Counted from the first letter of the stretch, positions 50,364-54,462 are shown. The stretch: 64,000 nucleotides of DNA from Salpingoeca rosetta (GCA_033442325.1 JAWQFM010000002.1:1750307-1814306), one strand, 5' to 3'. Made by a program: numbers and translations. Notes: generated by a model not told the origin, from the letters alone.

Positions 50364-52748
<2,385 letters not shown>

Positions 52749-52792
52749 CTTCAGTTTCCGCTAGCTTTGTTTGTTGTTGCTGTGTGCTGATC

Positions 52793-53920
52793 ATGGTTGC
52801 GTGTCGCTGCTGGTGTCTTGGGCTTGTGATTGCATTGGCGTGTGTCGCTGTGACCGCCGCCACAAATGTCAACAACAACAACAACAACAACAATGAGGCG
52901 CCGAGCATTGAAGCACGCAACGGGTCGCTGGTGTTCTTGCTGAGCGCCAACGGAGATGCAACGTTCAAGATTGCCAATGCCAACCAAGACAACAACAACG
53001 AAAACAACAACAACAACAACAACGACAACGACAACAGCGGGTATGAAGAGGTGAGCATGCGGGCAATGGCGTCACAGCTGGCAGCGCTCACAACCCAGCT
53101 TACGGAAGAACTGAGCACCGTTCGGTCTCAGGCGGAGAGCCAGGCCCGCGCAGTGACAAGCGCGGCCACGGACGCGCTCAACGCCACGCTGCAAGACGAG
53201 CTGTCACGCCTGCGGTCTGCGCTCGACCACGAGCGGCAGCTGCGCCTGCAGCAGGACACTGCCGCCCAATCCCTGCAAGTGGAGGTGTCTTCCCTGCGCC
53301 AAGAGGCCGCATGGCTCCGCACTAACCTCTCGGACGCCGAGGGTGAGGCTGCTCGCCTCAGCGCAGAAGTTGCGCGCCAGAACACCGCCCTCATCGGTGC
53401 GCTGGAGATGGTCAGCAACGTGCGCGATGAAGCGGAGCAGCGGGACGCCGGACTGGACAGCCGCATCACGGACGTGGTGAACGACATTGGAGACGTGAGC
53501 ATGGCGACGGAGAACGTCCACACGGCCGTGGAAGGCCTGACAACGCAGGTGGACCGCGTGAAGCCGCAGGTGTTGTGGCAGACAAGCTCCGCAAACACGT
53601 ACAGCCTACGCGACATCTTCGACGACCTGCGCAGACAAGGCATGAGCCCTGGCGTGTACGACTGCGTCCTGCGCACCAACAACGAAGCTCATTGGACCGG
53701 CCGTCGCTTCACCATTACCGTCAACTTGTATGTTCGTACGACCAATCCCAACTACCCCCACATCATCAAGGAGTTGATTGACATCAACGCCGGAAGCAGC
53801 GGGTGCAATGGCGGCCTCACGTCCTTCTCCGTGTCCTCGTCCAACACTGCCACCTTCTCCTTCACCCCCGGCAACTGCGTCCAGAAACTCACCCTGGCCT
53901 GCAAGCCACGCTGGATTTGA
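52793..53920 (+). CDS. Intronless secreted protein (375 aa): signal peptide, cubilin-N-like motif, long coiled coil, C-terminal Cys-containing globular domain
   Basis: ATG 52793; hydrophobic N-terminus MVACRCWCLGLVIALACVAVTA; GC-rich codon usage; heptad-rich region ~53055-53560; stop at 53918-53920 followed by the GT tract typical of 3' ends in this window. Confidence 0.8.
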   Translation: MVACRCWCLGLVIALACVAVTAATNVNNNNNNNNEAPSIEARNGSLVFLLSANGDATFKIANANQDNNNENNNNNNNDNDNSGYEEVSMRAMASQLAALTTQLTEELSTVRSQAESQARAVTSAATDALNATLQDELSRLRSALDHERQLRLQQDTAAQSLQVEVSSLRQEAAWLRTNLSDAEGEAARLSAEVARQNTALIGALEMVSNVRDEAEQRDAGLDSRITDVVNDIGDVSMATENVHTAVEGLTTQVDRVKPQVLWQTSSANTYSLRDIFDDLRRQGMSPGVYDCVLRTNNEAHWTGRRFTITVNLYVRTTNPNYPHIIKELIDINAGSSGCNGGLTSFSVSSSNTATFSFTPGNCVQKLTLACKPRWI

Positions 53921-53929
53921 TCTCGGCTC

Positions 53930-53960
<31 letters not shown>

Positions 53961-54462
53961 CTGTGTGTCTGTGTCTGTGTCTGTGTCTGCCTGTGTGAGT
54001 GTGTGTTTGTGCGTCTGTGTGTCTGTGTGAGTGTGTGTTTGTGTCTGTGTGTCTGTGTGTGTCTGTGTGTGTCTGTGTGTGTGTCTGTGTCTGCCTGTGT
54101 TGACATGACTGCTCTTCTGTTGTTTCCTACTTCTTCTTACTTCCTGTTGGTTCCTTCTTGCTCCCTCCTCTTGCTGGCTCCTGCGACTGCTTCCTGTCTC
54201 TTTCATTCCCTGCCTGCCTGCCTGCCTGCTTGCTTGCTTGTTGGCTTTGCTCGTTCCCCTTTGTGGTCGTGCCTCCGTTCTTACCCCTCGCCACACCAGC
54301 GTTACATCTTGCCAGTGCAAACAACAACAACAAAGAAAGGGACCAGAAGCAAAGCAAGCAGCACGCACAGCACGCACAAACAGGACACAAAACACACAAG
54401 CAACAGCAAAGCGACCGACCATCCATCATCCATGTTGTTGTTGTTGGTGACCTGGGATCATC

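What the first reader, a model, noticed from the sequence alone, without database searches (positions are those of the whole stretch)
52793..53920. Intronless secreted protein with a cubilin-like N-terminal motif, coiled-coil stalk and unassigned Cys-containing head
Seen: signal peptide, poly-Asn spacer, the motif APSIEARNGSLVFLLSANGDATFKI (52898-52972), a second Asn-rich spacer, ~170 aa of heptad-rich helix, then a ~120-aa beta-rich domain with four Cys (KPQVLWQ...YDCVLR...GCNGG...GNCVQKLTLACKPRWI). There is no TM anchor and no intron, in a region where most genes carry several. Established: cubilin begins with a similar motif (recalled as PRMATERGNLVFLTGSAQNIEF) that forms an intertwined trimeric beta-helix followed by a coiled coil and docks on amnionless. 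Inference: this is a trimeric stalk-and-head protein, architecturally like collectins or viral fibres, using a pre-animal cubilin-type trimerisation/docking module to display a novel ligand-binding head. Plausible roles are prey capture, bacterial recognition or extracellular matrix, possibly as part of a modular family with swappable heads.
Basis: partly seen in the sequence, partly recalled or inferred. Interest (0 to 1): 0.75.

Follow-up and report, generated by a model that had tools for sequence, protein, structure and literature searches.

The report
Choanoflagellate fibre protein with bacterial-type tip
This is a real single-exon gene of the choanoflagellate Salpingoeca rosetta for a secreted stalk-and-head protein whose head belongs to a rare, unnamed family otherwise found at the tips of bacterial fibre proteins, so the head most likely moved between bacteria and choanoflagellates; the proposed kinship with animal cubilin is not supported.

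Summary
Window 52793-53920(+) is an intact 375-codon ORF, identical to a 375-aa protein already in public sets. It has a signal-peptide-like start, two poly-Asn linkers around a 25-aa beta motif, about 170 aa of helix, and a 120-aa C-terminal beta domain with four conserved Cys.

The head is unannotated (no Pfam, PHROG or NCBIfam hit) but not unique. An exhaustive profile search found about 36 clusters among 1.84 billion representatives, nearly always at the C-terminus. Bacterial-type members sit on collagen or phage-tail-fibre-like stalks (three Myxococcota-sample genomes, 50-61% identity).

Four other proteins share the S. rosetta layout of motif, coiled coil and head, including one from Salpingoeca helianthica. 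Best reading: a homotrimeric secreted fibre whose tip was exchanged with bacteria, probably bacteria to choanoflagellate.

Cubilin homology failed every test I could run: no PDB sequence or profile hit, no amnionless gene, no EGF or CUB domains.

This scan had already noted the N-terminal module on other S. rosetta DNA, claiming about 150 genes with swappable heads. I confirmed the signature in two of those genes but could not reproduce the count.

The family is single-copy in this genome.

The parts
52793..53920 (+). Complete single-exon CDS (375 codons plus TGA)
   Evidence: An identical 375-aa protein is in NCBI, UniRef and EukProt.
52793..52861 (+). Signal-peptide-like N-terminus (residues 1-23). 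A type II signal anchor is not excluded.
   Evidence: Read from the sequence. AlphaFold2 gives helix 7-21. No predictor was available.
52862..52894 (+). Poly-Asn linker 1 (residues 24-34)
   Evidence: pLDDT below 50.
52895..52978 (+). N-terminal beta motif (residues 35-62), signature P-x-I-x4-G-x-L-x-F-x5-G-D-A-x-F, containing an N-G-S sequon
   Evidence: AlphaFold2 predicts a hairpin at 39-42/45-48, with low confidence. The same signature occurs in L021:3978-4112 and L045:4812-5003. Similar motifs occur in P0026, P0028 and P0042.
52979..53047 (+). Asn/Asp-rich linker 2 (residues 63-85)
   Evidence: pLDDT below 50.
53048..53557 (+). Alpha-helical coiled-coil stalk (residues 86-255), with breaks near 180 and 233-241
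   Evidence: Heptad scan. AlphaFold2 helices 89-179, 183-232 and 242-253. Only sub-threshold coiled-coil Pfam hits.
53558..53917 (+). C-terminal head or tip domain (residues 256-375), a beta-sandwich with four conserved Cys; member of a rare unnamed family
   Evidence: Homologues. Alignments. Models. No Pfam, PHROG or NCBIfam match.
52586..52705 (.). (CA)n microsatellite in the 340-bp upstream intergenic region
53925..54100 (.). TG-rich microsatellite directly after the stop codon

Best explanation
The gene encodes a secreted, most likely homotrimeric, fibre protein of Salpingoeca rosetta.

Proposed layout of the mature chain, after signal-peptide cleavage:
- A short beta motif set between flexible poly-Asn linkers.
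- About 170 residues of coiled-coil stalk.
- A 115-120-residue disulphide-bonded beta-sandwich tip.

The tip is homologous (50-61% identity) to the C-terminal tips of bacterial fibre proteins. Their stalks are collagen triple helices or phage-tail-fibre/MAT-like beta structures, found in Myxococcota and in uncultured bacteria.

The same layout of motif, coiled coil and tip occurs in Salpingoeca helianthica and in three environmental proteins. So the tip was probably taken once from bacteria, grafted onto a choanoflagellate stalk, and then inherited.

The N-terminal motif carries the signature of a stalk module seen on other S. rosetta secreted proteins with unrelated heads.

By analogy with bacterial and phage fibres, the tip is the ligand-binding end, probably for a surface glycan or another cell-surface epitope of bacteria or matrix. 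The stalk spaces and trimerises it.

Shown here: gene integrity, domain layout, homology, and rarity of the family.
Inferred: trimer state, direction of transfer, secretion, and binding function.
For: Gene and layout:
- ORF and layout.
- The head is single-copy in the genome.

Head family:
- One search gave six metagenome proteins at 48-59% identity over the head only.
- (exhaustive HMMER, 1.84e9 representatives) gave 38 hits, about 36 real after removing two repeat proteins. Nearly all are C-terminal.
- There are 40 invariant columns among seven sequences, including all four Cys.

Bacterial members:
- Two Myxococcales MAG loci have chromosomal neighbours such as a succinate dehydrogenase flavoprotein.
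- 3 of 401 sampled genomes of that phylum carry the head.
- Two further metagenome loci have bacterial neighbours.

Stalks of bacterial members:
- Collagen PF01391 occurs in P0003, P0017 and the L020 protein.
- Tail-fibre PHROGs match the stalk only.
- P0003's N-terminus gives a sub-threshold Bdello_MAT_N match (34 bits, cut-off 60).

Eukaryote-type members:
- P0028 is S. helianthica, EukProt EP00048.
- P0026 and P0042 have an N-terminal motif plus coiled coil; P0027 has a coiled coil.

One origin is not rejected:
- AU test p=0.50 for a single clade of all coiled-coil-type heads.
- A loop insertion is shared only by S. rosetta, P0026, P0042, P0010/44 and P0011.

Resident gene, not contamination:
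- It lies on a 2.8-Mb contig with S. rosetta-type microsatellites and (AAC)n tracts.
- GC3 is 0.78, against 0.67 for the neighbouring exon.

Fold:
- The best-ranked look-alikes are C-terminal domains of phage tailspike, baseplate and fibre proteins.

Precedent:
- Trimeric fibres with swappable beta-sandwich tips that bind prey glycans are described in PMC10769870.
- HGT is common in choanoflagellates (PMC4046809).
Against: - No experiment or multimer model shows a trimer.
- The coiled coil has Ala/Ser/Thr-rich core positions and breaks.
- The head tree is unresolved. In the free tree the S. rosetta head sits in a polytomy with bacterial heads, apart from S. helianthica. It is 60-61% identical to bacterial heads but only 39% to the S. 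helianthica head. Separate transfers or a head replacement are therefore possible.
- The root, and so the direction of transfer, is unknown.
- Fold matches are all below the background level (Z 5.3 against a typical best of 7-8; Foldseek E above 1e-3 in the PDB), so no binding function can be read from structure.
- The environmental 'eukaryote-type' sequences have no taxonomic label.
- I saw no transcript evidence for the S. rosetta gene itself.
Confidence: 0.62

Rival explanations
1. One reading: the N-terminal motif is a true homologue of the cubilin N-terminus. It would form an intertwined three-chain beta-helix that docks the fibre on an amnionless-like membrane partner.
For: - The motif sits at the mature N-terminus and is followed by a coiled coil, as cubilin 36-135 does (PMC6283879).
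- Earlier scan notes say cubilin's tip is the best, though weak, structural look-alike of the S. rosetta module (not re-tested here).
Against: - No cubilin chain was hit in the PDB at E<=10 with the whole protein, the 28-aa motif, residues 33-136, or a 4-sequence profile.
- Amnionless PF14828 gave only a 20-bit hit inside a poly-Ser/Cys/Leu low-complexity tract.
- There are no EGF or CUB domains.
- The language-model look-alike search gave nothing relevant.
- The motif is only about 25 aa between disordered linkers, shorter than cubilin's hairpin plus three-turn helix.
Confidence: 0.1
2. Independent or recent grafting: the S. rosetta head was acquired, or replaced, from bacteria separately from the S. 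helianthica and environmental lineages. Each graft would land on a pre-existing native stalk-module gene.
For: - The S. rosetta head is 60-61% identical to bacterial heads but 39-49% to eukaryote-type heads.
- The free tree does not group it with them.
- The gene is single-exon.
Against: - The AU test does not reject one clade (p=0.50).
- The loop-2 insertion is shared only with P0026, P0042, P0010 and P0011.
- The whole layout of motif, coiled coil and head is shared with these proteins.
- Long branches in the eukaryote-type sequences explain the identity pattern.
Confidence: 0.2
3. Reverse or viral route: the head arose in eukaryotes, or in a virus of protists or bacteria, and spread to bacteria. 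Alternatively, both domains of life received it from viruses.
For: - The distribution in bacteria is very patchy (3 of 401 genomes; 2 species by strict patterns among 185,579).
- All fold look-alikes are viral fibre or baseplate domains.
- The bacterial stalks are phage-tail-fibre-like.
Against: - No relative was found in IMG/VR with the conserved patterns.
- The head has no PHROG match.
- Bacterial-type heads have the shortest branches, the greatest stalk diversity and the deepest-branching members.
- The bacterial loci show no phage genes nearby.
Confidence: 0.1
4. Not a functional gene: a decaying horizontally acquired or retro-copied ORF that is not expressed.
For: - It has no introns.
- It is wedged between microsatellites, 340 bp after the neighbouring gene's stop.
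- No transcript data were checked.
Against: - The 375-codon frame is intact.
- All invariant family residues, including the four Cys, are kept.
- GC3 is host-like and high.
- A signal peptide and stalk have been added.
- The homologue in S. helianthica comes from a transcriptome.
Confidence: 0.05

Closest known systems
Bdellovibrio MAT (mosaic adhesive trimer) fibre proteins, non-S74 subgroup (PMC10769870)
   Same: - Both are secreted or surface trimeric fibres with an interchangeable C-terminal beta-sandwich tip that recognises cell-surface ligands.
- The bacterial relatives of this head have tail-fibre-like stalk motifs.
- One bacterial relative has a sub-threshold Bdello_MAT_N match.
- In the Myxococcales locus L013, a neighbouring 485-aa protein has the same N-terminal domain but a different C-terminus.
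   Different: - The S. rosetta protein has an alpha-helical coiled-coil stalk, not a beta-prism.
- It has no G-x-G-T-type stalk motif and no MAT N-domain.
- The head did not match any solved MAT tip in the fold searches.
- The host is a eukaryote.
Phage tail-fibre, baseplate and tailspike C-terminal domains (T4 gp9 1QEX; Klebsiella phage KP1 9F4A; Acinetobacter phage tailspikes 6C72 and 6E1R)
   Same: - These are the top-ranked structural look-alikes of the head.
- All are C-terminal domains of trimeric fibres.
- By my own recollection, gp9 also begins with a coiled coil.
   Different: - The scores are at or below background: Z 5.3, Foldseek E 3e-3 in the PDB, about 5e-4 in BFVD, TM 0.37-0.45.
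- There is no sequence similarity and no PHROG match for the head.
Collectins and C1q/TNF-type proteins (collagen or coiled-coil neck plus globular trimeric head)
   Same: Same design logic of signal peptide, trimerising stalk and C-terminal recognition head. Several bacterial family members do use collagen stalks.
   Different: There is no C-type lectin, C1q or TNF domain, and the head's fold search did not return them.
Cubilin N-terminal trimer and amnionless (CUBAM, PDB 6GJE; PMC6283879)
   Same: A short N-terminal strand motif is followed by a coiled coil in a secreted protein without its own membrane anchor.
   Different: - No detectable sequence or profile similarity.
- No amnionless gene.
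- No EGF or CUB array.
S. rosetta N-terminal 'stalk module' gene family reported by earlier agents of this scan (about 140-150 genes, unpublished notes)
   Same: The signature P-x-[IV]-x4-G-x-[LIM]-x-[FVA]-x3-5-G-D-[IA]-x-[FL] is shared with an ILEI-type gene (L021) and an L-domain gene (L045).
   Different: - Here the strands are separated from the helix by a 23-residue poly-Asn/Asp linker.
- I could not retrieve other members by search, so membership rests on a short signature.

Membership tests
Cubilin N-terminal domain / CUBAM | Sequence or profile similarity to cubilin residues 36-135 | tested here: not met
   No cubilin chain at E<=10 in four PDB searches: whole protein, 28-aa motif, residues 33-136, and profile A3. 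The test is underpowered for so short a motif. No cubilin family alignment was available for a profile-profile comparison.
Cubilin N-terminal domain / CUBAM | Amnionless partner encoded in the genome | tested here: not met
   PF14828 against the six-frame genome gave one 20.3-bit hit (cut-off 30.4), lying in a poly-Ser/Cys/Leu tract.
Cubilin N-terminal domain / CUBAM | Intertwined three-chain beta-helix | not testable with these tools
   Only monomer AlphaFold2 was available. The motif is modelled as a low-confidence hairpin (pLDDT about 50).
Cubilin N-terminal domain / CUBAM | EGF and CUB domain array after the coiled coil | tested here: not met
   No EGF or CUB Pfam hit.
Unnamed C-terminal fibre-tip ('head') family | Significant profile match over the whole roughly 114-position domain | tested here: met
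   E 4.9e-57 to the head profile, though the query is one of its three seed sequences. Independent of that, 48-59% identity to six metagenome proteins and 53-58% to two Myxococcales loci.
Unnamed C-terminal fibre-tip ('head') family | Conserved core: four Cys plus the Y-D-C-V-L-R-T and H-W-T-G-R-R-F blocks | tested here: met
   These are invariant columns in A1 and A2. Cys 338, 362 and 370 are invariant and Cys 291 nearly invariant in 23 sequences.
Unnamed C-terminal fibre-tip ('head') family | Position at the extreme C-terminus, directly after a fibrous stalk | tested here: met
   The domain ends within 0-3 residues of the C-terminus in nearly all full-length hits. The stalk is collagen, a tail-fibre-like motif or a coiled coil.
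Bdellovibrio-type MAT fibres | MAT N-terminal domain and beta-prism stalk with capping-loop motifs | tested here: not met
   The S. rosetta protein has no NCBIfam Bdello_MAT_N hit, only a spurious SMC hit, and no tail-fibre motif. A bacterial relative, P0003, reaches 34 bits against a cut-off of 60.
S. rosetta N-terminal stalk-module family (scan notes) | Shared strand signature near the mature N-terminus, followed by a coiled coil | tested here: inconclusive
   The signature is shared with L021 and L045. Four kinds of genome-wide search found no others.
Trimeric coiled-coil fibre | Three-chain oligomer | not testable with these tools
   Inferred from collagen stalks directly abutting homologous heads. 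No multimer modelling or experiment was available.

The most novel reading that the evidence does not exclude
Choanoflagellates may run a eukaryotic counterpart of the phage and predatory-bacterium receptor-binding-fibre system. In this reading, a native N-terminal trimerising stalk module, possibly the evolutionary forerunner of cubilin's three-chain tip, displays interchangeable heads. This gene would show that such heads can be captured ready-made from bacterial fibre proteins and used to recognise bacterial prey or partners.
Probability: 0.12. Interest if true: 0.85.

Novelty: new variant of a known kind. Interest (0 to 1): 0.5.

Why it matters
Fibres with swappable tips are how phages and predatory bacteria recognise cell surfaces. 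Here a homologous tip sits on a eukaryotic coiled-coil stalk in a bacterivorous close relative of animals. That gives a concrete case of domain-level transfer between bacteria and choanoflagellates.

It also defines an unnamed, very rare tip domain: about 36 clusters in 1.84 billion representative proteins, with no Pfam entry and no clear known fold.

S. rosetta is genetically tractable, so the protein is a candidate for studying how choanoflagellates bind bacteria or build matrix.

The finding does not provide evidence for a pre-animal cubilin/amnionless receptor.

Tried and rejected

Paralogue and relative searches that found nothing useful:
- The whole-protein own-genome search gave only poly-Asn/Gln matches. 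L002, L003, L004 and L010 were inspected.
- The 30-aa motif, a 2-sequence motif profile and the L045 module each found only themselves.
- The DNA pattern for P-x-I-x4-G-x-[LI]-V gave 60 hits against 32 in the reversed control. None of the 20 inspected hits was a module.
- The second and third big protein searches added nothing. Low-complexity words swamped the alignment query, and the S. helianthica head found only P0027.
- Alignment A4 was too diverse for a metagenome scan. A5 found two more bacterial-type loci only.
- The IMG/VR scan was blank.

Other dead ends:
- The ESM Atlas look-alikes of residues 33-135 were at chance level.
- The amnionless hit was rejected as a low-complexity artefact.
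- P0035 and P0041 were rejected as repeat-protein false positives of the head profile.

Full report
**1. Observation**

Window 52793-53920(+) is an uninterrupted 375-codon ORF. The identical 375-aa protein is already held by NCBI, UniRef and EukProt. Earlier notes of this scan identify the genome as Salpingoeca rosetta. The window is G000:C2:1750307-1814306.

Layout, by residue:
- 1-23: hydrophobic, signal-peptide-like start.
- 24-34: poly-Asn linker.
- 35-62: the beta motif. The quoted string lies exactly at 52898-52972.
- 63-85: Asn/Asp-rich linker.
- 86-255: helix with heptad-type core occupancy. AlphaFold2 gives helices 89-179, 183-232 and 242-253.
- 256-375: beta-rich head, with the only four Cys of the mature chain at 291, 338, 362 and 370.

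There is no second hydrophobic segment. The gene is bracketed by (CA)n/(TG)n microsatellites. The upstream ORF piece 52267-52449 is the C-terminal end of a DUF829/TMEM53 protein. It stops at TGA 52450-52452 in a different frame, 340 bp before the ATG, so the two are separate genes.

**2. The head is not unique**

Pfam, PHROGs and NCBIfam give nothing for it. A word-indexed search of 5.8 billion proteins found six metagenome proteins at 48-59% identity covering only the last roughly 115 residues.

A head-only profile (A2) was run exhaustively against 1.84 billion representatives. It returned 38 hits, about 36 real after removing two repeat proteins. Nearly all have the domain at the extreme C-terminus. 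All four Cys and the two central sequence blocks are conserved.

The family is therefore very rare but genuine. In the S. rosetta genome it is single-copy.

**3. Who carries it**

Bacterial-type members:
- Two loci lie in Myxococcales MAGs (L013, L014), with ordinary chromosomal neighbours.
- A sample of 401 genomes of that phylum contains it in 3.
- Two more metagenome loci have bacterial neighbours.

In these proteins the head follows one of two stalk types:
- Collagen Gly-X-Y repeats, ending about 5 residues before the head (P0003, P0005, P0012, P0017, P0020 and the L020 protein).
- Repeated G-x-V-G-I-G-T-x-x-P-x-x-K-L motifs, which match phage tail-fibre PHROGs.

P0003's N-terminus gives a sub-threshold match to the NCBIfam model of the Bdellovibrio mosaic-adhesive-trimer N-domain. 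In L013 a neighbouring 485-aa protein has the same N-terminal domain with a different C-terminus. These are fibre proteins with swappable tips, of the kind described for Bdellovibrio (PMC10769870). No relative was found in IMG/VR with the conserved patterns.

Eukaryote-type members:
- P0028 is from the Salpingoeca helianthica transcriptome in EukProt. It has a signal peptide, a motif (S-V-R-T-Q-N-G-S-L-Y-F...), a long coiled coil and the head.
- P0026 and P0042 are environmental and have the same layout.
- P0027 has a coiled coil plus head.
- P0010, P0011 and P0044 have tandem heads.

**4. History of the head**

The head tree (33 domains, 116 columns) is poorly resolved:
- S. rosetta sits in a polytomy with bacterial heads.
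- S. helianthica plus P0027 form one strongly supported pair.
- P0026, P0042, P0010/44 and P0011 form another supported clade.

The S. rosetta head is 60-61% identical to bacterial heads, 45-49% to P0026 and P0042, and 39% to S. helianthica. However, forcing all coiled-coil-type heads into one clade costs no likelihood (AU p=0.50). A loop insertion between the G-L-T-S-F and P-G-N-C blocks is shared only by S. rosetta and the P0026/P0042/P0010/P0011 clade.

Together with the shared full-length layout, one acquisition followed by fast divergence in eukaryotes is the simplest reading. Separate grafts remain possible.

Bacteria to eukaryote is favoured because bacterial-type heads have the shortest branches, three stalk types and the deepest-branching members. 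The tree is unrooted, so this is an inference.

The gene is clearly resident. It lies in a 2.8-Mb contig, has host-type repeats, and has GC3 of 0.78.

**5. Structure**

The head models as a beta-sandwich with one short helix. pLDDT is 78.7 with 7 sequences and 91-98 with 23.

Fold searches give no clear match:
- Foldseek against the PDB: best E 3e-3 to 5e-3, for T4 gp9 and the Klebsiella phage KP1 baseplate.
- VIA-align: best Z 5.3, for the C-terminal domain of an Acinetobacter phage tailspike. This is below the tool's stated background of 7-8.
- BFVD: best E about 5e-4, TM 0.36-0.45, almost all caudoviral fibre, baseplate or tailspike proteins.

The theme is consistent (tips of trimeric viral fibres) but is a lead only.

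**6. The N-terminal motif and cubilin**

No cubilin chain appeared in the PDB at E<=10. I tried the whole protein, the 28-aa motif, residues 33-136, and a four-sequence profile. The only amnionless (PF14828) hit in the genome is a 20-bit match in a low-complexity tract. There are no EGF or CUB domains. A language-model look-alike search was at chance level.

Nothing I could run links this motif to it. The tests are underpowered for a 25-residue motif, and multimer modelling was not available, so I leave about 10%.

**7. The motif as a shared module**

Earlier agents of this scan report that about 140-150 S. rosetta secreted genes start with one short strand-plus-coil module and end in unrelated heads, with only a weak cubilin link. 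I treated this as a lead.

Following two of their descriptions, I fetched two genes:
- An exon of an ILEI-type gene (L021:3978-4112).
- An L-domain gene (L045:4812-5003).

Both share with my motif the signature P-x-[IV]-x4-G-x-[LIM]-x-[FVA]-x3-5-G-D-[IA]-x-[FL].

My own genome-wide attempts to find more copies failed. Membership is therefore plausible, and the count is unverified by me.

**8. Mechanism proposed**

I propose a secreted homotrimeric fibre. The head, like its collagen-attached homologues, sits on a three-fold axis and is the ligand-binding tip. The coiled coil is the spacer and trimeriser. The N-terminal motif, glycosylatable at N-G-S (a sequon shared with S. helianthica), caps or docks the base.

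Likely ligands are surface glycans or epitopes of bacteria or of the cell's own matrix. The trimer state, secretion, ligand and direction of transfer are inferred, not shown.

**9. Verdict**

This is a real, already annotated but uncharacterised gene.
- The stalk-and-head reading is supported.
- The cubilin reading is not.
- The head is a member of a rare, unnamed bacterial-type fibre-tip family, which makes this a case of domain-level exchange between bacteria and choanoflagellates.

Interest is moderate.

Noticed in passing
window 52267-52452 (+): This is the last coding piece of a DUF829/TMEM53-family gene (Pfam E 1.6e-8). It ends at TGA 52450-52452, and only 340 bp, mostly (TG)n/(CA)n microsatellite, separate it from the fibre gene's ATG. 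The long upstream extension of the ORF (52388-52792) is just translated microsatellite.
   Followed up: partly
L013:10001-11458 (-) and L013:7221-8330 (+): In the Myxococcales MAG, a 485-aa neighbour shares the N-terminal domain of the collagen-head protein but ends in a different, unassigned C-terminal domain. This looks like tip swapping within one bacterial locus. A 2348-aa surface protein lies next to it.
   Followed up: no
P0017 (638 aa, metagenome): A bacterial-type family member combines a MAM domain (PF00629, E 1.8e-13), tail-fibre-like motifs, a collagen stalk and the head. MAM is mostly an animal extracellular domain.
   Followed up: no
P0010, P0011, P0044 (JGI metagenome proteins): These proteins carry two tandem copies of the head domain joined by an acidic linker, with long Gly-rich loop insertions. 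Their origin is unknown.
   Followed up: no
P0028 (S. helianthica) and P0027: Their heads carry an extra Cys pair in a loop-1 insertion. Their coiled coils contain repeated E-x-S/T-R-A-x-x-x-E-type units. They form a long-branched, strongly supported pair (100/99).
   Followed up: partly
window 52919-52927 (residues 43-45): The N-G-S glycosylation sequon inside the N-terminal motif is conserved in the S. helianthica homologue (Q-N-G-S-L). Two more sequons lie in the stalk, at N130 and N178.
   Followed up: no
L045:4266-6221 (G000:C36): This is a single-ORF 651-aa secreted protein. It has a Cys-rich start, a poly-Ser linker, the strand module plus a short helix, then L-domain/LRR-like repeats (PF01030 hit, 28 bits).
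   Followed up: partly
L015 (G000:C4:286018-289389): Long poly-Ser/Cys/Leu and poly-Asn/Tyr translated tracts sit in what looks like an intron of an aldehyde-dehydrogenase-like gene. They produce a spurious amnionless hit.
   Followed up: yes
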